A DNA stretch of 63,211 nucleotides, filler included, from Octopus bimaculoides (taxonomy: Eukaryota), in assembly GCF_001194135.2 (NCBI RefSeq). It is 7 parts of 7 records of this genome, joined end to end, with 100 filler letters (N's around TTAATTAATTAA, not from the genome) between each part and the next. Parts side by side here need not be neighbours in the genome. Positions count along the whole stretch, not along the records: positions 19,220 to 35,920 come from NC_068983.1; 6 more parts are not named here. One strand, given 5' to 3'. A program made the translations under genes and the position numbers. Below the pieces are notes generated by a model. It made no database searches. It saw nothing but the letters and a program-made list of their open reading frames with translations, and was not told the DNA's origin. Shown here in pieces: positions 657 to 36,738 of this stretch; within the stretch, counting starts at the first letter, position 1; every line of letters starts with the position of its first letter.

Positions 657-688
<32 letters not shown>

Positions 689-3600: not shown

Positions 3601-3724
3601 GTGGTGGTGGTGGTGGTGGTGGTGGTGGTAGGTGAAGGGTGGACTGACATTGAAGGATTGCGGGAGCCAGAAGTCAAAGAAAGACTGTGAGTACCAGAGA
3701 GAGAGACAGAGACAGAGAAAAAGA

Positions 3725-3766
<42 letters not shown>

Positions 3767-4074
3767 AGACAAAGAAAGGGAGGGAGACTGAGCGAAACAG
3801 AGAGAGAAAGACAGAGGGAAAGAGAAGAGGGCGAGAGATAGAGGGGCACAGACAGATAAAGAGAGAGAGACACAAATGGCTAGACAGAGAGACAGACAGA
3901 CAGACAGAAACGTACGCACATTGATAGAGACAGGTGGAGACATCTACACACACACACACGCACATACTGTGTCTAGAACTATGCTAACGAAAATGTACTT
4001 CTCATTAAATTTTGAGACGTTTCGGTATGATTTGGGGGATGATTTGGTTGTTATTGTTAGCAGGTCGAAGTGTG

Positions 4075-5233
4075 AAGCATTAGAACGTCAGAATATATTT
4101 GTAGAATATATTCCGGACTCTTGTCGTCCCGGTTTCGAATCCCACAGAGATCCACTTTGTCTTTCATCCTTCCAGGATCGATAAAACAAAGTACCAATCA
4201 TGTTAATGAGGTCGATGGCACCGACTAAGTCCCTTCCCTTCAAAATTTCTGGTCTGGCGCCTGAGTCAGAAACCATTGTTTTGAGGTCGAACTTCTATCA
4301 AACGGAGGATGCTTTCATTCGTATGTATAAAACATGGAAGCGGTGACTGTACGTGCGCGCGTGCGTGTCGTGTTTGCGTATGTGTGTGTGTGGGTGTGCG
4401 CGCGTGTACGTGTGTGTGTGTGTGTGTGTGTGGGCGAGCGTGTATGTGTTTTTCTATTATGTATTTATCATCGTCGGTTTTACCATTTCCAAAGAAAATT
4501 CCCAACCATTTGCCAACGGCGAACATGAAATCATACTGGAGAACTGGGGCAGGAATGGTAATATGAGTGAATAGGTTTATCGTATTGAAGAAAGATTTGA
4601 ATGGACTTTGGTTATTATTCGATTAGATCGACCCCAGTGTTCAGCTGATGCTTATTTTATCGACCCCGAAAGGAGGAAATGCAAAGTCGACTACGAGGGA
4701 ATTTGAACTCAGAACGCAGTGGAAGGCGAAATACTGATATGCATTTCGTCCGGCATGCTAACAATTCTGCCAGCCCGCCACCTTTTAATAATGATAATAA
4801 TAATTTATTTCTTTATTGCCTACAGGGGGCTAAACATAGAGGGGACAAACAAGGACTGGCAAAGGGATTAAGTCGATTACATCGATTCCAGTGTGTAACT
4901 GGTACTTAATTAATCGACCCCGAAAGGATGAAAAGCAAAGTCGACCACGGCGGAATTTGAACTCAGAACGAAATACCGGCAGACGCAATTTTTTCACAAA
5001 GTCATCAATTTCGGGGTAGGTGGTTAGTCGTTCACATCGACCCCAGTGTTCAACTGGTACTTATTCTATCGACCTCAAAATGATGAACGCAATGCCGACT
5101 CCGGCGGCATTTTAAACTCAGGACTTAAAGTCGAAATTAAATGCCTCTAAGCAATTTTCCCGGCGCGGTTAACGATTCTGCCAGCTCGCCCCCTTAATAA
5201 TAATCATGATAATGATAAATAATAATAATGATG

Positions 5234-6447: not shown

Positions 6448-6720
6448 CTAAGTTACGGGGACGTAAACACACCAGCATCGGTTGTCGAGCGATGTTGGGG
6501 GGAGGGAACAAACACAGACACACAAACATATACACACACATACATACATATATATATACATATATATACGACGGGCTTCTTTCAGTTTCCGTCTACCAAA
6601 TCCACTCACAAGGCTTTGGTCGGCCCCAGGTTATAGTAGAAGACACTTGCGCAAGGTGCCACGCAGTGGGACTGAACCCGGAACCATGTGGTTCGTAAGC
6701 AAGCTACTTACCACACAGCC
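6448..6720 (-). mobile_element. tRNA-derived CORE-like SINE family B
   Basis: Minus strand reads ggctgtgtggtaagtagcttgcttacgaaccacatggttccgggttcagtcccactgcgtggcaccttgcgcaagtgtcttctactata: A/B boxes plus a CORE-like segment. Homologous copies at about 15843, 18185, 22855 and 41429. Confidence 0.85.
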
Positions 6721-10309: not shown

Positions 10310-11182
10310 NNNNNNNNNNNNNNNNNNNNNNNNNNNNNNNNNNNNNNNNNNNNNNNNNNNNNNNNNNNNNNNNNNNNNNNNNNNNNNNNNNNNNNNNNNN
10401 NNNNNNNNNNNNNNNNNNNNNNNNNNNNNNNNNNNNNNNNNNNNNNNNNNNNNNNNNNNNNNNNNNNNNNNNNNNNNNNNNNNNNNNNNNNNNNNNNNNN
10501 NNNNNNNNNNNNNNNNNNNNNNNNNNNNNNNNNNNNNNNNNNNNNNNNNNNNNNNNNNNNNNNNNNNNNNNNNNNNNNNNNNNNNNNNNNNNNNNNNNNN
10601 NNNNNNNNNNNNNNNNNNNNNNNNNNNNNNNNNNNNNNNNNNNNNNNNNNNNNNNNNNNNNNNNNNNNNNNNNNNNNNNNNNNNNNNNNNNNNNNNNNNN
10701 NNNNNNNNNNNNNNNNNNNNNNNNNNNNNNNNNNATACCGTACGAGTGGAAATATATATGAAAGAAGGTTTGAAAATGGACTTATTTTTTAAAATATTTA
10801 TTTACTTAACCGGTTTCACTTTTTTAGAAAAAGATTATCAAAAGTCTTTGAGAATAATAAAAAAATGTTAAAAAACAGTTTGAGTATTAAAATGCATATA
10901 TACATTCTTTGATGATAAAATATATTTAAAGTATAAAGCTTTGTATGAACTTTGTATTGTTACATACTAATTATCACACATTCTCTGATATTAAGGTGAA
11001 AATGTTTAAAACAGTGTATGAAAATACACATATGGAAAAATACATATACATATTCTTATACATATTCTTTGATAATCGAATAAAGTTGAGGAGGAACTGA
11101 CCTATGTATTCGTGTGTGTGTCTATATGTATATATATATACATATATACATATATGTGTGTATGTGTGTGTGTATATGTTTA

Positions 11183-19219: not shown

Positions 19220-20243
19220 TGGAAATGGGAAAACTTTGATGTTTGGCTGGAGAGAAATGCCATTCTTGAAGTCTGGAACCAAGCCACTCTGCCTTTTAGT
19301 TTTGGTAATTTCAAATCGCACACTATATCATTTAACTCTCATTGACCTAACAAATGTGGGGAACTAGTTGCATCTGGAACATATACGCCATCTTTACCTA
19401 TTCCTACATCACAAGCAGAATCTTAGTATGAACTGCTGTTTATTGTCGTTGCTGGTGGAACTGGTGGTGGATTTGCTTCATCGCGTGGTACTGATTTTAT
19501 TGCTGATTCATAATATTTGCTTTTCTTTGTGAAACCAGCAATTTTTCTCAAATAAAAATAATAACCATTGAAGTGATTTTTCAGCTCACCCCAAACCATG
19601 AGGATTGAGAATGGCATAGCTTTCCTTTTATCATTCATCCAATCTGTTAACATTCCATTGCAATGTGTACAGAAAATATGTGGTGCCCAGTCCCTCCCTG
19701 GCTCTCCTAATTTGCAGACAAAATAATACCTGTAGGCAAGTTCAATCTTTGTTGTTATGTTTCTACGTTATGGCTTAGATGTATATTGTCCACAGATATC
19801 GTAGAAGTTGTCTGGGTGACTTACAGAACCACGTCTATTTGATTGCATTTAATTACCACACAATATCTGAAAAATAAATTACGTAGAAAGTAATAATTAT
19901 GATGTACAAAATAGAAATAAATACACACCGTAATACAAAATAAGTTATCACAGCTCCTTACTTGTTTACAAGCAAAGAGCTTGAACAACTGCTCTATTTG
20001 TCTATCACGTGGAAAAAGACCGTTGGGCCTTTTGCCATCTCCGGATAAATTTTATTGATCAAAAGCCGATTAAGCCGATTAAAACTAAAAACTGGACGTA
20101 GGAAAACTTGTAGGAAATTTTAGTGATTTCAATTTTATACAAAATCTATACAAAAAATCTAATCACAGATTTTAAATCAGCATACAGAAATTAGCTAAGA
20201 ACACCTTTTTGGTCTTCTGTAACAAAATCTTTCTGGACTAGTG
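19220..20243 (-). mobile_element. DNA transposon relic: TIR-like end plus N-terminal transposase pseudo-ORF
   Basis: Minus frame MQSNRRGSVSHPDNFYDICGQYTSKP*RRNITTKIELAYRYYFVCKLGEPGRDWAPHIFCTHC...KRKAMPFSILMVWGELKNHFNGYYF... then PHLLGQ*ELNDIVCDLKLPK. This matches a widespread invertebrate transposase family with FCYICG, DWAPH and ELNDLVRDL motifs. The end reads cactagtccagaaagatt. Superfamily not assigned. Confidence 0.7.
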
Positions 20244-20544
20244 TTATCTATCTCTCTATACAAAAAAATCCTTTGTATCTCAGTTCCCAATGCATTCTCA
20301 AAAGGTCCAACCAAATCAAATCAAATTTTACATGGTAATACTATGAGATCACAGGAGTGTGAAAATGTTTTTTTTTTTGGGATTAAAACAATGCAACATT
20401 GGCACTAGTTCCGTATTACGTCTGAAAACTCGAAGAATAAAAGTGAAACCGTCGATGAAGTTATCAATAGTTTCACTTTTATATCGTTTCACTTTTAATA
20501 AATTCACTTTTATTCTTTCACTTTTAATAGTTTCACTATATCGT

Positions 20545-20650
20545 CACCACCACCACCATCATCATCATCATTTAACGTCCGCTTTCCATGCTGGCATGGG
20601 TTGGACGGTTTGATTGGGTACTGGTGAGCCAGATGGCTGCACCAGGCTCG
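20545..20650 (-). mobile_element. RTE-type 3' tail with (GAT)n end
   Basis: aaaccgtccaacccatgccagcatggaaagcggacgttaaatgatgatg; a similar tail lies at about 31330-31470 on +. Confidence 0.55.
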
Positions 20651-20689
20651 GACAAAGACACAAATGATAATGGAATGAAAAAAATGAAA

Positions 20690-22440
20690 ATATGATTGGT
20701 GGGAGAGGCAGACGACGCCCGCCGATTGCTGCTTCCCGAAAACATTGTTCTTTTTTCCTCAACAACACAAAATAAGGTATTGAACCTCTTACCAAAGTTC
20801 AAAGAATGGACGCAATCGTCCTTACAAGATGAAGCGCTGAGCCTCTTACCAAAAAATAAGAAATTCAAATTTCAAATCAAGACACTAAGGCCTCTTACCT
20901 TTCCTCCCCCGACCAGGTAATTTGCCCCCCGCAGGCAATCTTGCAGTTCTAAGTCGGGGCTCCAGGAAGCAAAACTATATTGGTCCTTGGGAAAGGAGTC
21001 CATCACCCTGAACATATCATTTTCTATTATGACCGCTTTTACCTGCGGAGGCCAATCCGGATCTTCAGAACAGGACAGGACTCCTTCCCGCTGGCCCTCT
21101 AGCTTCTTCAAAAAGCTCTGTACAACCCAAGCTTTATGAAAGAAGATCACAAATTCATCCTTCATCATAATGGGAGGGGTCACAGTTTCCTCCGTCAGTG
21201 GCACAAATCCCATCGACGAGGTTTCAGGACATGCCGGCAGTGTACTACTTACCACCGGCAATGTCCCATTCTTCTTTTTCTTTTTTTCTCCCTTGTGCTA
21301 CAGGAGGGTGTAGTTCTTCCGTTTTATCCAGAGGATCTTCCCTCCCTCTCACAGCCTTGGGGTCTTTCGGTGTGCAACCATTGTTGCTCACCTTCCTTTC
21401 TTCCCTTTTTCGAGGAGGTCTCCAGCTTCTCGACTGTTTCCATCTCTCCCTCCGAAGGAGGAGGGAGCGCTACCTTTACTAACTGCTCCAGGAGCCTACT
21501 TTCGTCCTGGGGACAGTTCTTTCTAATATGGTCCGTTTCCAGGCATAGGTGACACTTGGGTGGTGGGGGGCGCATACCTCAAGTATCACAGGATACCTGC
21601 AACCGGCCATTTTCAAAAATCTGGAAATACCAGACCATTAGCGGCTGATTGGATTCATAGGGTCAAAACTGCTTTTGACCCCATGTCAATTAGCCGCCGG
21701 CAACAATTTCACATTTAAAAGCTTGGGCCCGCTGCCACCCAGACCCCGGCGGATAGTGTCCTCTATCCATTCCGGTTCAATGCCCGGTGACAGCCCACAG
21801 GCCCAAGCTCTTATCAGTTTCTTTCCACAATAAGTGAGGAGGAACAAAATCTCATTGCCCTCCAAGGGCTGGCTCGCAAACTTGCGAACCAACTAAGGAG
21901 TGTCAAATAGCCACGTCGTTGCATATTTAGCACCCCTGGAAAGAAACTTAATAGTTGGCAGATTCTCTGCCAACTCTTTTTCTATATCTGTCTTAGGAAA
22001 ACAGGAATAGTGTCGAGTGACATAGAATAAGTCTTCAACACCACCGTTCTTTCCTCTAATTCTTTTAGACATTGCTTGGGTGGGATGATTTCTCACTCCA
22101 ACGCAGTGTTCAATTTCTTCGCCATGCTTTGAAGAAAAAGTTCAGGAAACAGTTAAAAAAAATAACAAAAGTCTAAACAAAGTCAAAAAACAGTTCGAAG
22201 GAAGACAAAGAAGGGAAAAAGAAAGAAGGAAGACAGTTCAAAACACGGCAACACACAATTCCGGCCAACCGGTACTCCTGGCCAAAAGGTACTCCAAAGG
22301 TGAACAGGGACATAGCAGCAGGAATACAGGTTCAAAAAATCCACCACAAATTGGTAAAAATTCAGAAAAGTTTTTCACAAAAATTTTCACAATTTTTTGG
22401 AGGCGGGATACGCCATCAAAACAGTTCTCCCAATTAAGTG
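20690..22440 (-). mobile_element. Decayed L1/Tx1-like retrotransposon, 5' UTR plus ORF1 with gag-type zinc knuckle
   Basis: Frameshifted minus ORF from about 22125 includes YPVILE(G)MRPPPPKCHLCLETDHIRKNCP (CX2CX4HX4C), followed by a low-complexity charged region. Contains stops and frameshifts. Confidence 0.65.
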
Positions 22441-22854
22441 AGACAACGCAAATATAGGTAGACAAATGCCCAAAANNNNNNNNNNNNNNNNNNNNNNNNN
22501 NNNNNNNNNNNNNNNNNNNNNNNNNNNNNNNNNNNNNNNNNNNNNNNNNNNNNNNNNNNNNNNNNNNNNNNNNNNNNNNNNNNNNNNNNNNNNNNNNNNN
22601 NNNNNNNNNNNNNNNNNNNNNNNNNNNNNNNNNNNNNNNNNNNNNNNNNNNNNNNNNNNNNNNNNNNNNNNNNNNNNNNNNNNNNNNNNNNNNNNNNNNN
22701 NNNNNNNNNNNNNNNNNNNNNNNNNNNNNNNNNNNNNNNNNNNNNNNNNNNNNNNNNNNNNNNNNNNNNNNNNNNNNNNNNNNNNNNNNNNNNNTATATA
22801 TATATATATATGTATATATATGTATATATGTGCATATATATATGTATATATATG

Positions 22855-23045
22855 TATAATATATATATGTGTGCCTGTGTTTTTACCTCCACCATCGTTT
22901 GGCAACCGATGTTGCTGTGTAACCTACCAGTTCGGCCAAATACACCAATAGAATAAGTACTTGTCTTAGAAGAAATACTGGAATCGATGTGTTCGACTAA
23001 AGGCCGTGCTCTAGCATGGCCACAGTCACATGGCTGAAACAAGTA
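22855..23045 (+). mobile_element. SINE family B 3' half
   Basis: Tail gtgctctagcatggccacagtcacatggctgaaacaagtag. Confidence 0.75.
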
Positions 23046-23069
23046 GAACAATAAATAATTATGCCAGTT

Positions 23070-24320
23070 TAATGCCCAGCAACGCCGAGTATCTCTGCTA
23101 GTCTATATACTACTAAAACTGTGTGATTGATTCTTGCTTGCGATCTTGCTTGCGTTCGTGTTTGTCTGTAACTTAATACAGTTAAACCTGCGCATAATAG
23201 GACAATACTCTGAAAATAAAGTAACCCTGAAATGTGAATAGAAAGTGAATAAAACAAGTTTCACGTAAATCGGACCACGGATTCCCGAGATACAGTATTT
23301 TTTCGGTTTGTTTCCATCATGAAGTTATTGCCATTTACTTTGAACACCTGCATAGTTTTGCTGGCATAACTACCGATGTGTACCCCGCCGAATTTGTGCC
23401 TCATATCTTCCAAGAAAATGGAGTCTTTTCAAAAAATACCTCTTAGACACTGTGGATTCAGAGTATAGAGGGCTTTATGGCAATGAATTTTTCCAAGCGG
23501 GTGGGGAGAGGAATTTCAGAAAATTCGCACGATACGACTTTTTCCCTCATAACTTTCAGGAAAATGAATTTCTTTTAAAGAAATGTTATACAAATACTTT
23601 ACAAATAGCATAGATTACGATTATAAAGAAATTTATGAGGAAATTTTTATTCCGAGGGAGTGAGAAGAGGAGTTTCGAAAAACAGAGTTTTGGATAATTT
23701 AACAGAACCAAACCGGCACATAATAGGAAAGTACTCTAAAAGTAATGCACCCTTGAAGTGTGAATACAAAGGGAAAACACGTATCGCGTAAATCGGACCA
23801 CGGGTTCCCGAGATACGGGGTCTTTTTCGGTTTGTTTCCAGCATGGGGTTATTGCCCTTCTTTATGAAGACCTAGATAGTTTTGTTGTCATAACTACTGA
23901 CGTGTACCCCACCCACTTTTTTGCCTCATTTCTTCCATAAAAATGGAGACTTTTCAAAAAATACCTCTTAGACGCTGTGGATTCAGAGTATAGAGGGCTT
24001 TATGTCAACGAATTTTTCCAAAGGGGTGGGGAAAGGAGTTTCAGAAAATTCATACGATACAACTTTTTACCTCATAAACTTTTAGATAAGTGGATTTCTT
24101 TTAATGAAATGTTATACAAATACCTTACGATTATAAAGAAATTTGTGTGTAAATGTTTTTCCGAGGGAGTGGGGAGACTTTTTGGATAATTTAACAGAGC
24201 CAAACCGGCGCATAATGGGAAAATACTCTAAAAGTAAGGTACCCCTGAAGTGTCAATACAAACGGAATAAAATACGTTTCGCATAAATCAGACCACAGAT
24301 TCCGAGATACCAGGTTTTTG
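23070..24320 (+). mobile_element. Helitron-like 3' end (hairpin plus CTAG at 23098-23101) abutting a 5' TC end, followed by an internal tandem array of about 500 bp
   Basis: gcccagcaacgccgagtatctctgCTAG|TCTATATACTACTAAAA. The same 3' motif occurs at 43756 on minus. Confidence 0.55.
23183..24320. repeat. Diverged tandem repeat, about 2.3 units (23183-23710, 23711-24201, 24202 partial)
   Basis: Units start aaacc(t/g)gc(g/a)cataat(a/g)gg and share taaatcggaccacgg, gtggattcagagtatagagggctttatg and ttacgattataaagaaattt. Confidence 0.9.
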
Positions 24321-24794
24321 GGGGTACCTTCATAAATAGTCAAAACGGTGCATAACGAGAAAATTCTCCGAAAGTGATATAACCCTTAAATGGAAAATTT
24401 GTTTCCATTGATTTTATGTTTACATCATGTTACAATTCCTTTTGCATTTTTCTAGAAGTGCACACATATGCCATAAATAAATGCTGTTACTGGAGCTGAA
24501 GTTTATCCCGGAAGTTCTATTTCTATTAGATGATGTAAATAATCAGTAAAACTTTAAACATGAACCTGTAAATCAGACCTATGATGACACGAACGAATTG
24601 AAATATTTAATTGAATTATCCTAAAATGAACTTTCATTTCAATGAAAAATTGAAATCAGCTACAATGTTTTATAACTTGAAACGTCAGTGATACAACGGG
24701 CCACGGGTAGAGTAGTCAACTATAAATAGACAATATGTAACATAGCGATGATGTCTTGTTAATGTTTAACACTGCCACAAATGATACAAGACGG

Positions 24795-24985
24795 TGATCT
24801 GGCAGAAACGTTAGCACGCCGGGCGAAATGCTTAACGGTATTTAGTCTCTATGTTCTGAGTTCAAATTTCGTCGAGATCGCTTTTACTTTTCAGGGTCGA
24901 TAAATTAAGTACCAGTTACGTACTGGTGTCAATTTAATCGACTGGCCCCATCCTCAAAAACTTCGGGTCTTCTGCCCAGGGCAGA
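24795..24985 (+). mobile_element. SINE family A copy
   Basis: ctggcagaaacgttagcacgccgggcgaaatgcttaacgg...gggtcgataaattaagtaccag. Confidence 0.8.
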
Positions 24986-25174
24986 AAAAAATGACCTTAC
25001 ACAGTTACGAACACAGCAGCATATATAAGTCATGCTGGTTAGGATTTGAAGATATTTTAAGCCAATCATAAAAAGTCGATGACTTTAGATATTTTCTTTG
25101 ACCTTATGTAAACTTTCATAACTTTTCCTACCTATTAAAACGTTTCTATTTTCTTTTTAAATGTTTATTTGAAG

Positions 25175-25269
25175 AAATCTGCAAATCATATTCGAGGCTG
25201 TTCAAGGATCCGGTTACATGAGTGATATAGCTATTGATGATCTGACCATGTCAACAAACGACTGTTCAT
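25175..25269 (+). CDS. MAM-domain gene exon A: C-terminus of MAM domain 1
   Basis: Translates (N)LQIIFEAVQGSGYMSDIAIDDLTMSTNDCS, the classic MAM IxFE...DIAIDD...C end. Donor T|gtaag is phase 1. The acceptor (gaag at 25171-74) is uncertain. Confidence 0.85.
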
Positions 25270-26303
25270 GTAAGAGAATGNNNNNNNNNNNNNNNNNNNN
25301 NNNNNNNNNNNNNNNNNNNNNNNNNNNNNNNNNNNNNNNNNNNNNNNNNNNNNNNNNNNNNNNNNNNNNNNNNNNNNNNNNNNNNNNNNNNNNNNNNNNN
25401 NNNNNNNNNNNNNNNNNNNNNNNNNNNNNNNNNNNNNNNNNNNNNNNNNNNNNNNNNNNNNNNNNNNNNNNNNNNNNNNNNNNNNNNNNNNNNNNNNNNN
25501 NNNNNNTGTGTGTGTGTGTGTGTGTGTATGCGTACGTGTGTGTGTTTGTGTGTATGTGTGTGTATGTAAGTCTGTATGTATGTGAGTGTATCTTGGTAAT
25601 CCATATATTTACTCAAGTTTATTCCATTCCATTTATATTATAGTATTGATTTCATCATGCAACCGAATAAGTAAAAGAACAAAAAGAAGGATTAATAGAA
25701 AATTTGAAAAATGTTCTTCGTCTTCTTTTAGATATGTTTCCAATTTTTAAATATCCTACTGACATACATTTGTGTCTCATATAATTATGTTTGCAAAATA
25801 TGGAGTGTCTCTGCTTCTGCTTAAACCCGAAATTCATCTATGGTTTGCTTAAAGAAGTCTATTCTAGGTTTGCTAGTTCAGTACTAGATACAAGTGCATC
25901 ATACGAGAGGTCCTCTCCCTAGTAACTGAGTCTACTGTAGACAATTGACACTTCACCATCAAATACTGTCCTAATATCTTGAGAAGGAAAAGTACACATT
26001 GGATAAGTGAAGCCTGGCAAACACCTGATATACTGGATAGATATGATTGAAATGATTGCGACCATATATGTCTGGTCAGCATGGATCTTGGGTGAGACAT
26101 CAGAAACAACATAATACAATAGAATTTATATATAAAACGTTGTACTTATTACACTCTTGCTCAGTGTGAAAACAGCTTGGAAATTCAGTTTCTACAATAA
26201 ATGTTCTTGTATTGAGCAATAAAAATGTGTTACTATGAAATACTGTTAAATATACCAAACATTCCAAATAGTCAGTATTTTGCCCTGCTTATTGTTGTTT
26301 GAT

Positions 26304-26626
26304 GAAGGCACGTAGCTTAGTGGTCAGGGTGATCGGCTCATAATCGAAAGGTCATGAGTTCAATTCCCAGCGGGGCGTTTTGTTCTTGAGCAAGATACTC
26401 TATTTTATGTTGCTCCAGTTTACTCAGCTGGCAAAATTGAGTTTTAACTGTAATTCGAAGGGTCGGCCTTGTCACATTCTGTGTCACGCTGAATTTGCTT
26501 GAGAAATACGCTAAAGGTATGCCTGTCTGTGGAGTGCTCAGCCACTTGCACGTTAATTTCACAAGCAGGCTGTTCCGTTGATTAGATCAGCTAGAGCCCT
26601 TGTCATCACAACCGATGGAGTGCCAC
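26304..26626 (+). mobile_element. Mosaic SINE family E (family D-like head/core plus family C tail)
   Basis: Core ttgagcaagatactctattttatgttgctccagtttactcagctg is shared with 49911. Tail gtcacgctgaat...gagtgctcagccacttgcacgttaatttcac...gatggagtgccac is shared with 16033. A second copy lies at about 45455-45770 on minus. Confidence 0.75.
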
Positions 26627-27104
26627 TTATTGTTATTTGAATCCGATGGATATTCTTGCTTGATTACTAACTAGCTCTTGTCTAGATTTTCATATGAACA
26701 AATGCATAATAAAGGAAGATTTACACATACACTTGTGTATGTGATGTTTTCAACTGCATCTGTGTGTAGATTGATGGATGTTCAGATATGTATCTAAATG
26801 AATGCAAAAACTAAATTTCATTCTTATCTCTAGAGTTGTTTACAGGAGGTCCCCAATCAAATATCTGTATTCTAAAATATGTGAATTTGAGAAATATTGA
26901 AAGCAATATCATTGACAGTCAAGTTAATACGGCTGAACGATACGAGTCTGTCAAAATGATATTTTGCTCACAGGTTGAAAGGTTTGTTGGTGGTTCTAGG
27001 AAAACAAATAATAATAGCTTTAAAATAAACTGAGCAAGGAGCATAATAAGCACAAAAAGGTGTGAGACACCGGATTTTGATTATACCATATTCAAATTCG
27101 TAAT

Positions 27105-27341
27105 GGTTAACCGGCCATATCCGGCCAAAATATTCTACATGTTTCATGTTCAAACTGGCCAGTTTGAAAGCCAACCCTACAACATAATTCCCAAAATACA
27201 ATATAATCCTACAATATCTTTCCATAAATTAAGTTATCTCATTAAAATCTCAAAGCTATGAGATAATCCATGTTTAATTCAAAACAATGTAATTGATTAA
27301 ACATTATTTTTGATAGAATAATTTGAATGCTAGAGGGTTAA
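27105..27341. mobile_element. Putative TTAA-type (piggyBac-like) MITE remnant
   Basis: Ends in aatgctagagggTTAA; the left end is degenerate. Recognised from memory of a common cephalopod repeat. Confidence 0.35.
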
Positions 27342-27651
27342 GTGTGAATATAAATCAATTTGTTAAGTGGGTAAACACTAAAAACAGCAACTGGCAGTGA
27401 TCTCTACAATTAGGTCCACATCACTGATCATCATATATTGTGAACCAAGAATATATCTAGTAAGTAAACAGGTCAATCATTCTAACAAACTTGTGGATAT
27501 ATTGCCTGAAAGTTGTGGTCCATGGTGAAAGAATTGTAAAGAAATTGATTTTAGAATGTAACTTTGGTCATCAAATACATTGATTTTCTGAGTAACTGCT
27601 CAGAGATAATTGTTTTAACTACTTAAATCACACATTTTCCATTAATTTCAG

Positions 27652-27771
27652 TCTGGAATGCTTCCTGTAATTTTCGTGAAGACACTTGCAATTATGATAT
27701 TGATTCTAAATATTCAAGGTACGGCTGGAGAACGAGCAGGTTGTCTGAACTAAGTGACCGTTCAGGTTCTG
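27652..27771 (+). CDS. MAM-domain gene exon B (version 1): N-terminus of MAM domain 2
   Basis: taatttcag|...|gtaatt; 120 nt, phase 1-1. Reads FWNASCNFREDTCNYDIDSKYSRYGWRTSRLSELSDRSGS(G), with the MAM CxF...C...W start, in frame with exons A and C. Confidence 0.85.
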
Positions 27772-27839
27772 GTAATTAACTCTCTTTTCTTTATCATTAT
27801 TTCAAGTAGAAATCGTATTCAAAATTTGANNNNNNNNNN

Positions 27840-27954
27840 AATGCTTCCTGTAATTTTCGTGAAGACACTTGCAATTATGATATTGATTCCACATATTCAA
27901 ACTATGGCTGGGGTATGGGCAGGTTGTCTGGACTAAGAGACCGTTCAAGTTCTG
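27840..27954 (+). CDS. Exon B version 2 (5' end lost in the 10-N gap): allele or duplicate
   Basis: NASCNFREDTCNYDIDSTYSNYGWGMGRLSGLRDRSSS(G), same donor gtaatt; 12 nt differences from version 1. Confidence 0.7.
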
Positions 27955-28600
27955 GTAATTAACTCTCTTTTACTTATCATTGTTTCAAGTAGAAACCGTA
28001 TTCAAAATTTGAATTACTATTAAAGAATTACAGAAACTTCTAGTTCCATATCTACAAGAAATCTTTTACATATTCCGGCAGAACTCTTTGGGTATGAAAT
28101 TCAAATCTCACCAAGATCAAATTTGTCGTCCGTGTAAAGTCGATAAATAATGTACCCGTCTTGATAATCAGAATAATTATAACTGCAAGTTTGTTCCATT
28201 CATTTGTATTACCCAAGGGAAATAACTTATCTTGATAAAGGAAGTAGCTAAGGAATAGTGTAGTACGTACTCGGTGCAAACACTGGTATACTAACGATGT
28301 GATATCTGGCAGATTACAAGAGAATCATAACTTCATATACGCTAAATAGATATGAATAGTCAATAGTAAGAACATCCTCAGCTGCTCACATTCTTCATTA
28401 GATGTTTTTTTATAGTTTGTTTCCTAGAGCATCACATTAGTGTTGGAATTGTGTAATAGTAATAAAAGTATGAATACATATAAAATATGGAAGAAATACA
28501 GTAACCATAAGAGCATCATAGCAAACCACAGCGCATACCCAAAGCACACAGAGCTGCGCTCGACAATGAAGTGAAAGCACGCTATAAAAATAAAACTACC

Positions 28601-28641
<41 letters not shown>

Positions 28642-28688
28642 TCGAAAAATACCTTAGGAATGAGAACCCAGGTTCGAAATTTCCCCAA

Positions 28689-28734
28689 GACACCTGATGA
28701 AGGCTGGAAGGTATATCAGCCAAAACGTTGTGTT
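28689..28734 (+). ncRNA. Minimal type I hammerhead-like motif, core G12 mutated
   Basis: gacac-CTGATGA-a-ggctg(10 nt)cagcc-AAAA-c-GT-t-gtgtt. Stems I and II pair and stem III is the palindrome AACGTT. Confidence 0.55.
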
Positions 28735-31700
28735 AATAACAAACAAGATGAGGAGAAATATCCGTCAAATGTAAATAATGTACATAATTCCTCATCTCTT
28801 AAATATAGAATTGTATAACTTGCTTTGGTCTCAAACTGGGTTTGGAAACCTAACATCGCTGAAGGCTGCACTTCAGCTCCTAAGATTGTACAGCTTTATG
28901 TTCCAACTTCTAATTACGAGTTAAACTAAGCGGTTTTAAGGGCAGTAACTGAGCAGCAATTATCATAGATCCATGTATTATTACAATTACATGATCCCCG
29001 TTAACATATATTTGAAGATTATTTTTGTCTTATCCCATGCCTGAAATATAGTACTGTATTTACCTACCGTATCAAAGGAGGTTAATTTATACATTTCTTG
29101 AGTAGGATAAAATTTTGCGTGCCGTCTTTCTCCAAATTAAAACTGTTATTGGCAGGCCATCACCAATATGATCAGTCTTTTCATGACCATCAACAATTCT
29201 TCGAACAAACTTTCAGGGAACACTTCTTATTAGTTACAGATATAATACTTGTGGACACAGTGTGATTTTTCTAAGTCAACAAGACCCATGGGATGCTCCC
29301 ACTGGAGTCTGGCTTTATGTGTAAGCTATGACTCAACCAAAATATAATTTTGCTTAACATGCAAGGTTAAAATGAGTTTCCCCCTATAAAAATCGAAAGT
29401 CATGAAGACAAGTAAACTAGATTTTATGTAATTTTCCTATCTATTTTATTAACTATGTGTCGAATTTAACCTGTATGATATTAATTTTCATTCATTTCCT
29501 TATTTTATTGGTCCATAATCAACAACCTTCTTTAGACGTTAATTTGTTAACCATCAGGTTCTTACCAACTTACTCCACATCAGTTCTTTAGCTTTAAAAT
29601 GCGTTTTCCCTAACTGTTTTCAAATACGTAACAGCTAACATCCAACGAAACACCGCCATAAAAGATATAGAACTACACCAAAGTGAAAACAATACTTTTA
29701 GGCGCCTTGATCTCTCCAAACTGCTAAGGATCATCATAAAAGAGAAACGGCTCTGCATGCAGTAGCACGAGCTCTCTAATGCTAATGCCATATCTGATAG
29801 AGAGAGGTTTAACAAGCTGCCTTTTATTAATGTTTTTAGCGAGGTCATTTCTCTTGTCAGAACTTCAGCATGGAGATGTACTTCCCCGATGCATAATTGT
29901 TATGTCAATATTGCCACAGTATATCATAGAATACAATGAAAAAATGCTTCCCAGTTGAGCCCTGTCATCAGACTGTACAAAGGCTCATCCCGTGGAAAAC
30001 ATTTCAGAAGATGCCTTATTTGATGATGAAGAATCTTAGATCCATTTATTTAGTTCGTGACTAGTGCAAGTAGTAAATCTGAAGATGCTAATATGCACAT
30101 TACAAATTTGTGAGTCATTTCTTTCCATTTCAGAAGATTTGTGGTCACCAATCCTATTTGTGCACACACAGCTAGTATGAAAATCACACTTTCTGTCCAC
30201 CTACTAGAAACCTATCAATCACCCATTATATTTAGTCTATTTGCTGCCCTGACTTTATACTCAAATTTCACCCTGAAATGTGTTATCCGCACATATATAG
30301 ATTTTACCCACCTACTCATTCAACTCCCATTTAGATATCAGTAATCATGACTCCAAATCATTTCTGTTCAATGTCTCCCGCTCCGTTTCTTCTAAATATC
30401 TCAGCTACTTCTATCACTTTCCGAATTCCTCTAACACTGACAACTCAGCCACCTTTCATTCTGCAACAAAATAATTTATCTCCCTTAACAACTCTTTGAA
30501 ATTATCATTTTCCATAACTTATTATGCATGACTCTTATCAGCTTTCATAATTCCCCTTAAAACTGATACAGCTGGTGCTATTAAACTCCTTACGAAAATT
30601 GGCAATACATTCTTGAATGACACGCAAGTACCTTAAGCATTGGTACTTTAAACATTCTTAATCTTTTGCACACCTCCAAACCCATCCTCTCTAAAATCAC
30701 CCTAATCTATTCACTTATATGATCTAATTACTGTCTAACCAAAGCTACTACAGATCCGCATACTATACAACAATATTGCCAACAACTACCATTACCACAC
30801 AGGCCCTATGATACTTCAAATCTGAAGAATTGAAGGTGACATTGAACCAGTGAAATGAGGATCATGGTTACTGATATGTAAAGGAGAGAGAAGAGTGGCT
30901 GGAGTAGCATGTTTTATTCTAATTATCCAATGACGGCAAATATACCTTATCTATCTAGGGAGCTAAGTAGGTGACTAGGTGACCAAAGCCATTCTCTTAG
31001 ACACGTCTCTTGATAGCCCTTGTAAAGAAAAGCTCATGCTTTCCAAAATCCAAATTAATTCACACCGAGTTACACAATAGTAATATAGATAAAGAAAATT
31101 ACATACAATGCTAGGAAAAGTTTGTATTTATCAAATAAAGTACACAAGTATTACCCAATCACAATTCATGCAAGACTTCCATCCGTTAAAATTTACAGAC
31201 TTCATATATCACACATTCTTCGAGCTTTTCACCACATAATTTTCGCATGTCTTATTTGTTCCCCATCAAAGCCATTTCAAGCAGACTAGTGGAATTCTCG
31301 TAACCACTGTTTGGCATTAAAAAGGAGATTCAGCCGTAGAGACCTTACCAAAACAGACGGCTGAAGCCTGATGTAGCCCTGAAGCTTATCAGTTCCTGCC
31401 AAACTGTCTAGTCCATGCCAGTATGGAGAATGGCCTTTAAATTATGATAATGATGATGATAATGGTGATGGTGATGATGATGATGAGGAGGAGGAGGATC
31501 ACCACCACATGTCGATTATAATGGTTCTTAAAGTAGGAGCATCAATGTTTACTACCGAATATGAACCTGATCTATGTTGCACAAACTAGACAACATAGTA
31601 TCAATAAAAATATATTTGATATTTGATAAATATTTTCATGAAATTATACCACAGTTTCATGAATTTGGAATAACATTTCTCTCATTGTATCATCAGATTG

Positions 31701-31989
31701 ACGAATGATCATTGGTGAATTCTTGGACAAGTGTTTCTCAATGCAATTCATTCTGAATATTTCTGAATCGGTAGCCTTTTCCTTGTTTCATGCCAATATA
31801 GTCCCTCTTACTAACAACTTTACAGGGTAGTACCAAGCACTACTGAAGACTGTTGAATCAATGATGATAAATATGGCCAAAGTATATTCGTTTCTACTTA
31901 CGTACATGGGCAGCAGGTCGGAAGAATTGCTTACATAGTTTTAGAAGTAAGCTTCATTCATACTCCTAACTCTTCTGTTTGTTTTGTAG

Positions 31990-32346
31990 GATACTACCAG
32001 GTATTTAAAGGGTATTACTATAGCACAATCAGAGCCAGATTAACATCACCTTTACTTGATCTTCCACCGACGAAAACCAAGGTCACGTTTTATTACTATA
32101 TGAAAGGTAGTAGTCCTAGAGAACTACAATTACGATTTGTGGAAGATGAAGATCAAAATTCATGGCATACTGATGCATCATACTTTTGGCAAGATTCTGG
32201 AGACCATGGATCTCTATGGCAATATGGTTGCATGGAGCTGCCTACTAGTAAAAAAGGAAGAATCGTGTTCTATGGTATGTCAGGAAGGAGATGGTCTGGT
32301 GGAATGGTACTTGATGATATTGTCATTTCCAAAGGTTCCTGTCAAA
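31990..32346 (+). CDS. MAM-domain gene exon C: body and C-terminus of MAM domain 2
   Basis: ttttgtag|...|gtaagt; 357 nt, phase 1-1, no stops. Reads GYYQVFKGYYYSTIRARLTSPLL...VTFYYYMKG...FWQDSGDHGSLWQYG...GRIVFYG...LDDIVISKGSCQ. Confidence 0.93.
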
Positions 32347-33354
32347 GTAAGTAGCTTTCTATTTTGTATCATTACATGTACTGAATAATTTTTGAAATAC
32401 ATTTTCTAAGTATTTTACATCTGTGTTATATATTTTATGTGAAAAAACACTTCGCATATTTTAATAAATTTTGTTCATTTAATTTTCCTAAAACAAAGTA
32501 TACCTTGTTGTATTTTGGGGGTGTTATTTGTGCTAATAAAAACCCATGCAGTAGTTCTTCATTATTTTTTAATTAACACTCAAGTAATCAACCAATTTAC
32601 TAAATGATTAGTATTGATTGCCTGGTTAACCCATTACCTACCAGTGATCTCATATGAGATCACTTAAAATTTACAAATTTCGTAATTATCTGTCAATATT
32701 TACACATATCTAACCTTTTTGCTATATCTACTGGGCATATTTCTCTGATATTCAAATGAGGTTTGCTAATTTTTCACCCAATATCTCGTTTATTTCTATT
32801 TAAAATGTTATTTTGAAATGTTATTTTGATCATTCCAGCGTGTTTCTAAGGCTGTTTTATGCTAGAAATCAAAGTTTCATAAAAAAGATTCCGGTTAATA
32901 GAATTATGGGAGGTAATGGGTTAATCATTCAGTTCATCCAGAAATCGTATGGTTTATCGTCTGTTCGTTACCATTCACAAAGTCCTCATTGCTATGCCCA
33001 CTTTAACCCAAATTTTCAGATGGATACAAATTGACAAACTTGACGAACTGAATGAGATTTAGTCAGATCTTCGTATTCTCACTAACGGGTTTTAGATCGT
33101 TAACTTGTTTTCGAGCAATACTTGACACAAACACCCCTCATATGTAATTAATCTGTGTTATTAGGTATGTTATGCAATTTTCGTATTCTTATAATAGTCT
33201 GAATTATATCATTTAATTGGAATACATCGTAAAAGTAGCGAGAAAGAATACCTACAAACACTTTTCAATGCTCATTTAATTCTATTGTTATTTTATCTGT
33301 GTCGGTTGAGATTCAGCAGAATTAGTAGGGTACAGAACAAAGTCATTTGGCATA

Positions 33355-35110
33355 CTTAGCTACATTTAAGGGATACCTTCAATTCTATCAGTCAGGATGT
33401 CATTCTCCGTGCAGTAAGGGAGAATGCGCTACAGTCTATTACATGGCTTAGTAAACTTAATGGGAGCCCTCTACATCTCCTTTGGTGACCACCTCATCCC
33501 ATCTTCCTCTGGATTCCAACATGGTGACCTATTTGGACCTACACTATTTGCACTGGGTATTGATGATATTACCAAGATGGGAGCTAACCTGGACTTTAAT
33601 GCTTGGTTTCTTGATGATGCTTGTTTAGAGTGGAAGGGGCATCCTGATAAGGTCCTTGCAGCTGCGAGGACGATGATTAAGGAACTTAGTTTTAGAAGCC
33701 TTATCGTTAACAGTTCCAAATGCGAGCTCCGGATCCTTGATCACACAGCTTCACATCGGCAAACTGTTAACCTATTTACAGATTCCTTTCCCTCTATCAC
33801 GGTTTCTCCTTCATTAGCACGGTGCTCTCTTGGAACCCCACTTATTGACCGAGCTTTCAAATCCATATTTTGATCCAAGATGGCTAACTTTGAGCAACCT
33901 TTAAAAAAAATTTTGAAAACTGAGCTCCACGAAGATTTTTATAGTTAGGAATTACATGTCAATTCCTAAGTTATTGTATTTTTCAGAGTTAGTCCATCTT
34001 AGAAATTCCTTCTAATGCTTTGACGACCTTATTCTCTGGAAACCCGAATGCTTGGTCAATGTCAGACCCTCTCCAGAGGAACACGATCAGTTTGCCTTGC
34101 CCAAACGCTTCTCTTTCTTCTATTCACGCTTTTTCTCCCTTTTGGTAGGCAACATCCTCTCCTTTCCAACATGGACTAGTTCCAACAGGAGATGAATGAA
34201 GCTCTGTTACAGTGGAGAGAGCTGGGTTTGTCAGTTCCTGATACATATGCAGAGAGTATGGGACAATCTACATTCAGGTGTTACTTTCAATCCTCTCTAT
34301 GATCAATTTGATCAAATTTCAAGGTGTCACCTATTTTCTGCTTGTGTAAAATTCTCGGGGGACTGGATTGGTGCCCCACCTGTGACCAGCATTGGTGGTC
34401 TACTCAATCTAGATGAGCTTCGCATCTCCACTGTACTCAGAATGGGATCGGATGACTGTAGGGGACTGAGATATCGCAGCAGTGGGTCCCTCTACCCGAC
34501 AGGTCTTCAAGGTCTCTCTTGACGCCTAAATGCTGATCGTTTCACTCGTAACACCGAGCTAAATTTAATCATTAAGTGGGCCCTGGCCCGGGTTAATATC
34601 CCCTCATCTCTGGAGCCAGTGGGTTTATCCAGAAGTGATGGGGAGAGAACAGATGGTCTTACCCTTTTCTCTTGGTAAGAGGTAAGTGCCTCATCTAAGA
34701 CGCCATAGTCGGTGACTCTTTTGTTCCCTCCCACATCCTGGATGCTGCTGTATATAGGAGAGTAACTGCTTCCATAGTGAAACAGAACAAAATCCTTAAA
34801 TATCAGGACATGTTAGTGAACTATTTTTCCAGCCTCTGGCGTTTGGGACTTTTGGAGGATGGGTCGTAACGATAAAGTCATTGTCAGCATTGGCGGCTTG
34901 TCATCATCGAGGTGTCATGTGATGCTTGTGAGCGTGCTTGGCTCTCCCAATGTCTATGCCATGCCATCGCCCGTGGTAATGCCGCCAATGTGCTGGTCCG
35001 TTGAACCTTGTGGTGTATGACTAATTTGAGCTCCTGATATTCAATTGAATTTTTCTTTCTTTCTTTTTTGTTTTTGTTTTTTTTTATTTTTGTCTCTTTC
35101 TTCTACTTTG
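33355..35110 (+). mobile_element. Decayed CRE-like (restriction-like endonuclease) non-LTR retrotransposon, 5'-truncated, intronic
   Basis: RT motifs FNSISQDVIL, SGFQHGDLFGPTLF and WFLDD. C-terminal RNTELNLIIKWAL...EPVGLSRSDGERTDGLTLFSW and IARGNAANVL, then a T-rich tail. Many frameshifts. Confidence 0.8.
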
Positions 35111-35555
35111 TTCCGCTTAATCCATATTTTAATCCCCGTTTCGTATTTATATTGTTAATGTGGTTTCGTATACATATGTGTCATATACCAAAGAAAAATT
35201 GACAGTCTTAATGAATAAAGCCACGCGGATCCGGCTAAAACAGACCCTGATTTTCAGCCTCCATATGTTCGAAACAATATGTCCTTTCAATCACTTGAAT
35301 CAATTTAAATTCCCAAATCTGTGACTGTCTCTATGTCAAAAATGTTTATTATTTCAGATTGTGGAAACAGTATCACAAGAGATTATAACGCAGTTTCTCC
35401 TATTTCACATCAACTTACCCCTGAAAGAATATTTTTTTCTTTTTGGGGTCAAGTTCTGGTCATACACTGGAAATGATGCGTAAATCTATAACTCTCTTTT
35501 TATGAATTTGTAACTTTCTACCATTGTCATAAATTGCTATCATTTTATGTTTTAG

Positions 35556-35714
35556 TTGGGATAACAAACCGCGTGTGCACCTTTGATAACCCAAAGTTCT
35601 GTAGTTACACAATTGACTGTATGAACCCTAATGAATACACATGGAGAAGAAATTTTGGAAGTACTTCTTCCCGTTATACAGGACCTAGCACTGATCATTC
35701 AAATGATAAAAATG
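35556..35714 (+). CDS. MAM-domain gene exon D: N-terminus of MAM domain 3
   Basis: ttttag|...|gtaagt; 159 nt, phase 1-1. Reads IGITNRVCTFDNPKFCSYTIDCMNPNEYTWRRNFGSTSSRYTGPSTDHSNDKN(G), with the canonical WxRxxGxTxSxxTGPxxDH motif. Confidence 0.93.
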
Positions 35715-36738
35715 GTAAGTTGTTTATACTTTATGTTATTTTCTTTTATTTATACATAACATTATATCCCAAAGTATTTTTAATGAAATTTGTTCCTGTA
35801 TAAATCAGTACGATAAGCATTTACATGAAGGAATACAATTTGCCTGGCGAAGACATTTTGTCTCTACATGTATGATCACCAACCTATGAAAAAAATAATT
35901 GTTCATCAATATAACCAGTGNNNNNNNNNNNNNNNNNNNNNNNNNNNNNNNNNNNNNNNNNNNNTTAATTAATTAANNNNNNNNNNNNNNNNNNNNNNNN
36001 NNNNNNNNNNNNNNNNNNNNCCACCACCACAACCACCACCACCACCACCACAGCCACCACCACCACCACCACAACCACCACCACCACCACATGTCAGCAT
36101 GATGGCAGATTACTTCTGGTCATTGATACATGATGGTATGGATGCACAGTGCAAGCAGAATCCAAAACACTCCTCTGTTTGGTTCAATATGTAGGCTAAC
36201 CATTAGGAGCATATCTTTTTCACATTCATTTCATTTGATGCTGATGTTTCATTATTCATTTCATGATGAACATGATTCATTTCATGTTGATTTGTTATAC
36301 ATATGTTCTTAAATCTAACAGAAAATGCTTTTCCATGATTACTTGCTTCATTCTGATAAAGTGACAATTTATTAAAAGTTCACAATTTTTATTATTATTT
36401 ATTTGTATTTTACTGAAAATCTTTGCATGATAGAGCAAAATAGTTTTCATATTTAAAATCAGCAACTCAAAAATATGTAAGATCACATCCATGAACAAAA
36501 ATTGAAAATTAAAAAATTCCCAAATGCAGACCAGTGTTATTGTTTTTGATATTGTAATGAGCTGTTATGAAGAAAACTTCTAAGTTACAAATACTCTATG
36601 CTTTTTCTTTTATATATAACTGTGTATAAATAGATACGTACATATCAATATATACACATGCATACATATGTTCTAACACCCTCTTTCTTTTCCTCTCACC
36701 ATCTACCACTGATTCTCTATCATTCTGTACTGTTTCAG

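What the first reader, a model, noticed from the sequence alone, without database searches (positions are those of the whole stretch)
27652..28012. Two versions of one MAM exon with hypervariability confined to a single loop
A 173-bp segment (27657-27829) is repeated at 27840-28012 across a 10-N gap. In the 115 shared coding nt there are 12 differences giving 8 amino-acid changes (K>T, R>N, R>G, T>M, S>G, E>G, S>R, G>S) and only 2 silent codon changes. The first 16 codons (Cys scaffold) are identical, and the 58 nt of intron differ at only 4 sites. If these are two haplotypes the assembler could not merge, this is extreme allelic diversity, as expected under balancing or diversifying selection (self/non-self, gamete or pathogen recognition). 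If they are true tandem copies, they are candidate mutually exclusive exons: symmetric phase 1-1, same donor, Dscam-like. Either reading points to a variable recognition receptor. This is the best candidate for an undescribed system here.
Basis: partly seen in the sequence, partly recalled or inferred. Interest (0 to 1): 0.88.

Follow-up and report, generated by a model that had tools for sequence, protein, structure and literature searches.

The report
Overlapping contig ends duplicate one exon
The apparent side-by-side pair of exon versions is an assembly artefact in the California two-spot octopus genome: two contigs that overlap by 173 bases were laid end to end across a placeholder gap, and their differences look like ordinary unconstrained divergence between two copies of the region, not a hypervariable recognition system.

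Summary
The repeat is real as sequence: 27657-27829 and 27840-28012, 173 nt, 16 differences, 12 of them coding, 8 amino-acid changes. It is not a tandem duplication. Copy 1 ends on the last base before the 10-N gap. Copy 2 starts on the first base after it and lacks the splice acceptor and the first 5 exon bases. The window is Octopus bimaculoides chromosome CM046603.1, built from 2015 short-read contigs plus Hi-C. In the 53-kb locus all four 10-N gaps have redundant flanks. Three are suffix/prefix overlaps, and two of those are 100% identical. Larger gaps show no such overlap. A third contig 22 kb upstream carries one copy of the exon, with the upstream flank of copy 1 and the downstream flank of copy 2 in one continuous sequence. 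That contig belongs to a colinear block of at least 13 kb ('P') that differs from the window ('Q') by about 4% substitutions plus many indels. dN/dS between the versions is 1.0. The adjacent intron is as divergent as the exon, and equally dense patches occur in non-coding P-Q DNA. The three RefSeq 'isoforms' are mixtures of P and Q exon versions. The exon is the first exon of a MAM domain in a fragmentary multi-MAM gene model (MALRD1-like). Verdict: artefact, with no evidence for mutually exclusive exons or diversifying selection.

The parts
19220..28474 (.). 'Q block': the part of the window that has a colinear diverged copy ('P block') 21-22 kb upstream on the same chromosome scaffold. P is L001:1-13434 and Q is L001:21347-35996. 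The homology ends at window 28474.
   Evidence: blastn of the window piece and of L001 against itself gives 90-97% identical colinear segments, with 2-6% substitutions plus indels.
25218..25269 (+). Last exon of the preceding MAM domain (…MSDIAIDDLTMSTNDCS). A possible acceptor lies at 25173-74, and the donor GT is at 25270-71. The RefSeq model starts at the internal ATG at 25218. The P block carries a TNNCS version of this exon.
   Evidence: Sequence reading; tblastn of the public proteins against L001; spliced translation matches X1 and P0005.
27652..27771 (+). MAM exon A, version V1. It is complete, with acceptor AG at 27650-51 and donor GT at 27772-73, 120 nt, phase 1-1. It lies at the end of the left contig.
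   Evidence: It is used in RefSeq isoforms X1 and X3. It is 99.2% identical over 370 nt to the P-block contig.
27657..27829 (.). Terminal 173 nt of the left contig, which is copy 1 of the repeat. It ends exactly at the gap, 50 nt after the last base that distinguishes V1 from the P version (27779).
27830..27839 (.). 10-N placeholder between two overlapping contigs, not a real stretch of unknown sequence.
   Evidence: All four 10-N gaps in the 53-kb locus have redundant flanks. Three are exact suffix/prefix overlaps of 55 nt (100% identical), 330 nt (100% apart from an N run) and 173 nt (this one). Gaps of 21-4824 N show no suffix/prefix overlap.
27840..28012 (.). First 173 nt of the right contig, which is copy 2 of the repeat. 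It starts exactly 50 nt before the first base that distinguishes V2 (27890, equivalent to 27707).
27840..27954 (+). MAM exon A, version V2. It is truncated at the 5' end by the contig start, so it has no acceptor and lacks the first 5 nt. The donor GT is at 27955-56.
   Evidence: Merging the overlap (27652-27656 + 27840-27954) and splicing to the other exons reproduces the public protein UPI00071DCF3A at 229/229 residues.
31990..32346 (+). MAM exon B, the rest of the same MAM domain (119 codons, phase 1-1). It is single copy in the locus.
   Evidence: tblastn 100%; Pfam MAM covers profile positions 1-158 when exon B is joined to exon A.
35556..35714 (+). First exon of the next MAM domain (…CTFDNPKFCSYTIDC…GPSTDHSNDKN). 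The RefSeq model reads through its donor into the intron.

Best explanation
The 173-nt 'tandem repeat' does not exist as such in the animal's genome. It is made by two short-read contigs whose ends overlap by 173 nt. The scaffolder set them end to end with its minimum 10-N spacer instead of merging them. Each real copy of the locus has one exon A. The two contig ends differ at 16 sites because they were assembled from different templates. The end of the left contig (V1) is of the 'P' type, 99.2% identical to a contig 22 kb upstream. The start of the right contig (V2) is the 'Q' type, which continues into exon B. P and Q are two copies of a segment of at least 13 kb that differ by about 4% substitutions and many indels. 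They are most likely a recent segmental duplication inside or next to a large multi-MAM-domain gene (MALRD1-like). The V1/V3 pair, 3 differences in 370 nt, would then be allelic or near-identical variants of P. The exon's amino-acid differences reflect unconstrained drift in a poorly conserved stretch of the MAM domain. Shown: the gap-edge coincidence, the missing acceptor, the single-copy contig, the same signature at other 10-N gaps, dN/dS of about 1, and the P/Q blocks. Inferred: that the assembler's k-mer forks (k=51) set the contig ends, and that P and Q are paralogues rather than alleles.
For: (1) Copy 1 ends at 27829, the last base before the gap. Copy 2 starts at 27840, the first base after it, and lacks the AG acceptor and the first 5 exon nt. 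(2) The window piece is L001:26742-43442 of GCA_001194135.2 CM046603.1. That assembly is the earlier shotgun assembly plus Hi-C (PMC9068888). (3) All four 10-N gaps in L001 have redundant flanks, three as exact suffix/prefix overlaps (55 nt at 100%; 330 nt at 100% outside an N run; 173 nt at 91%). No larger gap has a suffix/prefix overlap. (4) Contig L001:12573-13434 runs continuously through the upstream intron (identical to window 27460-27656), one exon A (V3), the donor, and an intron that continues into the sequence downstream of copy 2 (window 28013-28474). This is the single-copy architecture. (5) The right contig starts exactly 50 nt before the first V2-specific base, and the left contig ends exactly 50 nt after the last V1-versus-V3 base, as expected for 51-mer graph forks (inference). 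(6) Colinear P/Q blocks: 90-97% identity, 4.1% substitutions on average, kb-scale non-homologous inserts. (7) dN/dS V1-V2 = 1.01 and V3-V2 = 0.82. Exon and intron densities are equal. 173-nt windows of non-coding P-Q alignment reach 16 differences at the 95th percentile and 19 at most, against 15-16 here. (8) Three distinct versions (V1, V2, V3) are present, and V1 has two states found in neither of the others. Reported genome-wide heterozygosity is 0.08% (PMC7656900). (9) RefSeq isoforms X1, X2 and X3 are exactly the combinations Q-prev+V1, P-prev+V3 and P-prev+V1. An older record equals Q-prev plus the overlap-merged V2.
Against: No reads were available, so depth and linkage across the gap are untested. 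The segment is about twice as divergent as the P-Q mean (nominal binomial p=0.002-0.005), although this is within the spread of non-coding windows. The left contig is only about 91% like P further upstream (window 25685-26734) but 99.2% like P in its last 370 nt. It must therefore be chimeric or carry a conversion tract, and I cannot tell which. I could not confirm the assembler, its k value, its minimum-gap rule, or that one animal was sequenced, because the 2015 paper was not held. The P block lies just before a 100-N gap (L001:14353-14452) that may be a Hi-C join, so P could be a redundant scaffold end rather than a true neighbour.
Confidence: 0.62

Rival explanations
1. The artefact is the same (overlapping contig ends), but the two versions, and the whole P and Q blocks, are two deeply diverged haplotypes of a single locus. 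The P block would then be an uncollapsed haplotig that scaffolding placed next to its allele.
For: P lies at what may be the end of an original scaffold, just before a 100-N gap. No second copy of exon B is present in the 53-kb locus. P/Q colinearity with scattered indels is what uncollapsed haplotypes look like.
Against: Three distinct versions of the exon exist, and V1 has two private states. A diploid single locus gives at most two. P-Q divergence of about 4% substitutions plus kb-scale indels is about 50 times the reported heterozygosity of 0.08%. About 7 kb at the start of the presumed second scaffold (L001:14453-21346) has no counterpart in the visible part of P, but the sequence upstream of L001:1 could not be fetched.
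Confidence: 0.27
2. The duplication is a true tandem copy of the exon. V1 and V2 both exist side by side in one gene and are used as mutually exclusive alternative exons, as in Dscam.
For: The exon is phase 1-1 and both copies keep the same donor. Public protein models exist with V1 and with V2, and none has both.
Against: Copy 2 has no acceptor, and the copy boundaries coincide exactly with the gap edges. Other 10-N gaps show the same overlap signature in non-coding DNA. The P copy has a single exon in continuous sequence. The distance from the copy 1 donor to copy 2 would be 58 nt plus the gap, and the normal upstream intron sequence is absent. The protein models are fully explained by P/Q mixing and by overlap merging.
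Confidence: 0.04
3. Whatever the copy structure, the exon's second half is a target of diversifying or balancing selection in a variable recognition receptor.
For: Eight of 38 residues differ, while the Cys-containing first 16 codons are identical. The 59-nt core has 10-12 differences, at or above the 99th percentile (9) of 59-nt P-Q windows. Both V1-V3 exon differences are non-synonymous.
Against: dN/dS is 1.0, or 1.2 in the variable half. Synonymous sites and the adjacent 58-nt intron are as divergent as the replacement sites. A 59-nt window with 10 differences also occurs in non-coding P-Q DNA. The numbers are too small for any significant excess, and no population data were available.
Confidence: 0.05

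Closest known systems
False duplications at scaffold gaps in short-read assemblies: overlapping or heterotype contig ends left unmerged (cited from my own knowledge of the genome-assembly literature, not checked here)
   Same: The repeat abuts a minimal placeholder gap on both sides. Its length is set by the contig ends. The same signature recurs at the other 10-N gaps of the locus. A continuous contig elsewhere shows the single-copy state. Annotation pipelines then produce spurious 'isoforms'.
   Different: The two ends here are 9% different rather than identical or about 1% different, because they come from two diverged copies (P and Q) of the region. The left contig also seems to switch type near its end.
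MAM and LDL-receptor class A domain-containing protein 1 (MALRD1)-like multi-MAM proteins of molluscs
   Same: The exons encode MAM domains (PF00629), with a full-length profile match. The RefSeq name is MALRD1-like. The nearest relatives in a 1.84-billion-protein library are giant proteins with up to 35 MAM stretches.
   Different: Only a 258-aa fragment is modelled, made of one complete MAM domain flanked by the tail of the preceding domain and the start of the next. No LDLa exon was seen in the window. The usual GP..DHT motif is degenerate (SDRS) in this domain. Identity to any relative outside this locus is 56% or less.
Dscam1-type clusters of mutually exclusive exons
   Same: The exon is symmetric in phase and exists in similar versions with the same donor.
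   Different: There is no second acceptor and no real tandem arrangement. No selector or docking elements were looked for or expected. The versions belong to different copies of the locus.

Membership tests
Assembly artefact: unmerged overlapping contig ends at a placeholder gap | The repeat copies end and begin exactly at the gap edges. | tested here: met
   Copy 1 ends at 27829 and copy 2 starts at 27840. The gap is 27830-27839.
Assembly artefact: unmerged overlapping contig ends at a placeholder gap | The same signature is seen at other gaps of the same nominal size in the same assembly, and is absent at gaps with estimated sizes. | tested here: met
   All 4 of the 10-N gaps in L001 have redundant flanks, and 3 are suffix/prefix overlaps. 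None of the 13 gaps of 21 N or more, nor the 14-N gap, has a suffix/prefix overlap.
Assembly artefact: unmerged overlapping contig ends at a placeholder gap | An independent continuous sequence shows the single-copy state. | tested here: met
   L001:12573-13434 has the upstream flank, one exon and the downstream flank in one continuous sequence. It is a paralogous or allelic copy, not the same molecule.
Assembly artefact: unmerged overlapping contig ends at a placeholder gap | Read depth and read pairs are consistent with one copy. | not testable with these tools
   No reads were available.
MAM domain (Pfam PF00629) | A full-length match to the profile above the gathering score. | tested here: met
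   Exon A plus exon B score 76.4 bits (V1) and 73.2 bits (V2) against a cut-off of 26.4, covering profile positions 1-158 of 158. PDB sequence matches include MDGA1, neuropilin-1 and -2, enteropeptidase and meprin MAM domains.
MAM domain (Pfam PF00629) | Conserved cysteines, with an N-terminal pair and a C-terminal Cys. | tested here: met
   C5 and C12 of exon A are identical in V1, V2 and V3, and exon B ends in …SKGSC.
Mutually exclusive tandem exon cluster (Dscam-like) | Two or more exon copies in tandem in one gene, each with its own acceptor and donor. | tested here: not met
   Copy 2 has a donor but no acceptor and lacks 5 exon nt. The tandem arrangement is explained by contig overlap.
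Mutually exclusive tandem exon cluster (Dscam-like) | Transcripts that contain exactly one of the copies, supported by junction reads. | not testable with these tools
   Only predicted proteins are available. They are accounted for by P/Q exon mixing and by overlap merging.
Hypervariable recognition receptor under diversifying or balancing selection | Replacement changes exceed silent and intronic changes (dN/dS > 1). | tested here: not met
   dN/dS is 1.01 (V1-V2) and 0.82 (V3-V2). Exon versus intron Fisher p is 0.58 and 1.0.
Hypervariable recognition receptor under diversifying or balancing selection | Many alleles in the population at one locus. | not testable with these tools
   No population data were available. 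The three versions seen are better explained by two loci.

The most novel reading that the evidence does not exclude
P and Q, and V1/V3 within P, are members of a small, rapidly turning-over cluster of MAM-domain exons, or deeply diverged haplotypes kept by balancing selection. In that case the segment after the Cys pair would be a genuine specificity-determining region of an octopus recognition receptor. The local twofold excess of differences and the all-replacement V1/V3 differences would be its first trace.
Probability: 0.05. Interest if true: 0.6.

Novelty: not a real feature. Interest (0 to 1): 0.07.

Why it matters
The main value is as a caution. In this widely used octopus reference, 10-N gaps mark contigs that overlap. 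The resulting false tandem duplicates and the neighbouring diverged copy have already produced three RefSeq 'isoforms' (XP_052822093, XP_052822094 and XP_052822095) that are mixtures of exon versions from different copies. Anyone screening this genome for tandem exon arrays, alternative exons or hypervariable receptors would collect such cases as false positives. If the minority reading were true, it would point to a polymorphic MAM-domain receptor in a cephalopod. Nothing measured here favours that reading.

Tried and rejected
(1) I looked for the genomic places of isoforms X1 and X2 and of the older protein P0005. None is on record; only X3 gave a locus. (2) I tried to reach the sequence upstream of L001:1, to test whether the start of the presumed second scaffold is also redundant with P, by searching the unannotated MAM exon L001:17609-17782 as a protein. 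It found no homologue, so the upstream extension could not be fetched. (3) AlphaFold2 on the 258-aa model without an alignment gave mean pLDDT 42.8, unusable for mapping the variable residues. I used the sequence alignment to the neuropilin-1 and MDGA1 MAM domains instead. (4) The 2015 genome paper was not held. The assembler, its k value, its gap rule and the single-animal origin therefore rest on my recollection or on inference. The 0.08% heterozygosity is taken from PMC7656900. (5) I looked for trypsin exons of the opposite-strand gene call inside the window piece and recognised none. (6) I considered orthologue-based polarisation of the changes and dropped it, because the closest outside relative of exon A is at most 43% identical. 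(7) I considered whether the first 50 identical nt show purifying selection. Given 4-9% divergence, the chance of 50 identical nt is 0.01-0.13. The stretch is also exactly what a 51-mer contig start would give, so no weight is put on it.

Full report
**Observation**

The segment 27657-27829 is repeated at 27840-28012. Each copy is 173 nt, and they are 90.8% identical without gaps, giving 16 differences. The exon is 27652-27771, with acceptor AG at 27650-51 and donor GT at 27772-73. It is 120 nt long and phase 1-1.

Twelve differences lie in the 115 shared coding nt and four in the 58 intron nt. With either version, exon A joined to exon B (31990-32346) matches the whole Pfam MAM profile. V1 scores 76.4 bits and V2 scores 73.2 bits, against a cut-off of 26.4.

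**The gap test**

Copy 1 ends on the last base before the 10-N run. Copy 2 begins on the first base after it. Copy 2 starts 5 nt inside the exon, so it has no acceptor. The repeat's length is thus fixed by two contig ends.

The protein search identified the gene as Octopus bimaculoides 'MAM and LDL-receptor class A domain-containing protein 1-like', accessions XP_052822093, XP_052822094 and XP_052822095. The encoding locus L001 is GCA_001194135.2 CM046603.1:35030229-35083553. The window piece equals L001:26742-43442 at 100% identity. That assembly is the earlier shotgun assembly re-scaffolded with Hi-C (PMC9068888), so its contigs are short-read contigs.

L001 contains four 10-N gaps, and all four have redundant flanks:
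- At 6610-6619, the 55 nt before the gap equal the 55 nt after it (100%).
- At 11108-11117, the 330 nt before the gap equal the 318 nt after it. The match is 100% apart from an enclosed 21-N run.
- At 35352-35361 lies the present case.
- At 123-132, a 45-nt stretch is shared between the two flanking contigs.

No gap of 21 N or more, and not the 14-N gap either, shows a suffix/prefix overlap. In this assembly, 10 N therefore marks contigs that overlap and were not merged, even when the overlap is identical.

**The single-copy state**

About 22 kb upstream on the same scaffold, contig L001:12573-13434 runs without interruption through four parts:
- the intron upstream of the exon, identical to window 27460-27656;
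- one exon A, called version V3 here;
- the donor;
- an intron that continues straight into the sequence found downstream of copy 2 (window 28013-28474).

So the upstream flank of copy 1 and the downstream flank of copy 2 are naturally joined by one exon.

**Where the contigs end**

The right contig starts exactly 50 nt before the first V2-specific base. The left contig ends exactly 50 nt after the last base that distinguishes V1 from V3, at 27779. This is what the forks of a 51-mer graph would give. It is my inference, because I could not read the assembly methods.

**Why the two ends differ**

The upstream contig belongs to a colinear block, 'P' (L001:1-13434). P matches 'Q' (L001:21347-35996, which runs to window 28474) in segments of 90-97% identity. 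The mean substitution rate is 4.1%, with many small indels and kb-scale non-homologous inserts. The homology stops at window 28474.

The last 370 nt of the left contig are 99.2% identical to P. The right contig is about 90% identical to P. The overlap therefore pairs a P-type end (V1) with a Q-type start (V2).

Three distinct versions exist. At two exon sites V3 has the V2 state, at one intron site it has a private state, and V1 has two private states. Reported genome-wide heterozygosity for this species is 0.08% (PMC7656900). From recollection only, the DNA came from a single animal. On that basis, three versions and 4% block divergence are better explained by two paralogous copies, with V1 and V3 as variants of one copy, than by two alleles. 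I put this at about 2:1 over the haplotig alternative. Reads or long-read data would settle it.

**Is the exon hypervariable?**

The evidence says no.
- **dN/dS:** Nei-Gojobori counts for V1-V2 are 9.5 replacement differences on 90 sites and 2.5 silent differences on 24 sites, giving 1.01. The value is 0.82 for V3-V2 and 1.2 in the variable half.
- **The 8:2 ratio:** Eight replacement codon changes to two silent ones is simply the neutral expectation.
- **Exon versus intron:** The adjacent intron is as divergent as the exon (Fisher p=0.58 and 1.0).
- **Comparison with background:** The 173-nt segment has 15-16 differences. In 173-nt windows of non-coding P-Q alignment the 95th percentile is 16 and the maximum is 19.
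- **Overall rate:** The segment is about twice the P-Q mean (nominal p=0.002-0.005). That is within the patchiness of the background.
- **Location of the changes:** By alignment to the neuropilin-1 MAM domain, the changed residues span a strand and the degenerate DHT-motif region, not one loop. A structure model was too poor to use.

**Annotation consequences**

- X1 is Q's upstream exon (TNDCS) plus V1.
- X3 is P's upstream exon (TNNCS) plus V1.
- X2 is P's upstream exon plus V3.
- An older record, UPI00071DCF3A, equals Q's upstream exon plus the overlap-merged V2 exon at 229/229 residues.

None of these is evidence for alternative splicing. They are combinations of exon versions taken from redundant sequence. 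The model is also a fragment. It starts at an internal Met inside a MAM domain and ends by reading through a donor. Its relatives are giant proteins with up to 35 MAM stretches.

**Verdict**

The tandem pair is an assembly artefact (confidence about 0.9). The differences are unconstrained divergence between two copies of the region. Those copies are most likely paralogues (0.6) and possibly haplotypes (0.3). Mutually exclusive exons and diversifying selection are not supported.

Noticed in passing
L001:1-13434 versus L001:21347-35996 (window up to 28474): The region has a colinear diverged copy of at least 13 kb, 21-22 kb upstream. Identity is 90-97%, with kb-scale non-homologous inserts and a sharp end of homology at window 28474. 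A 100-N gap (L001:14353-14452), possibly a Hi-C join, lies between the two copies. Whether this is a segmental duplication or an uncollapsed haplotig is undecided.
   Followed up: partly
L001:10001-43325 (window 25218-35803): RefSeq isoforms X1, X2 and X3 (XP_052822093, XP_052822094, XP_052822095) differ only in which copy's version of two exons they use, so they are annotation by-products of redundant sequence. The model starts at an internal Met of a MAM domain and ends by read-through into the intron after 35714.
   Followed up: yes
L001:6555-6674 and L001:10778-11435: Two further 10-N gaps have exactly duplicated flanks (55 nt and about 330 nt, 100% identical) in non-coding DNA. This is the same artefact without any divergence.
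   Followed up: yes
L001:17609-17782 (outside the window piece): An unannotated MAM first-exon-type ORF (…CSFDSNTCSVAINGTDYVWKRSL…GPKTDHS…) lies between the P and Q blocks. It is found in no public protein. It suggests the real gene is longer, with more MAM repeats than are modelled.
   Followed up: partly
window 23160-24320: About three tandem copies of a unit of about 525 nt (74-90% identical) lie in the intron region upstream of the MAM exons. This is probably a satellite-like or transposon-derived repeat.
   Followed up: no
window 33418-33870 (+): A 151-codon open frame has a weak reverse-transcriptase match (RVT_1, E=0.005, below the gathering score). It is probably a decayed retroelement in the intron between exon B and the next MAM exon.
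   Followed up: partly
window 22795-22868 and 25507-25590: The two larger gaps (319 N and 226 N) are bordered on their right side by (TA)n and (TG)n microsatellites, an ordinary cause of short-read contig breaks. An (AAT)12 run lies at 28602-28639.
   Followed up: no
window 27745-27771 and 27928-27954: In this MAM domain the usually conserved GP..DHT motif is degenerate (LSDRSGSG in V1, LRDRSSSG in V2). The next domain keeps GPSTDHS (35556-35714).
   Followed up: no
L001:37132-53325, minus strand (window 29610 onward): The collection's gene calls list a trypsin-domain gene on the opposite strand whose range overlaps the 3' part of the MAM gene. I recognised no trypsin exon among the minus-strand reading frames of window 28500-35920.
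   Followed up: partly
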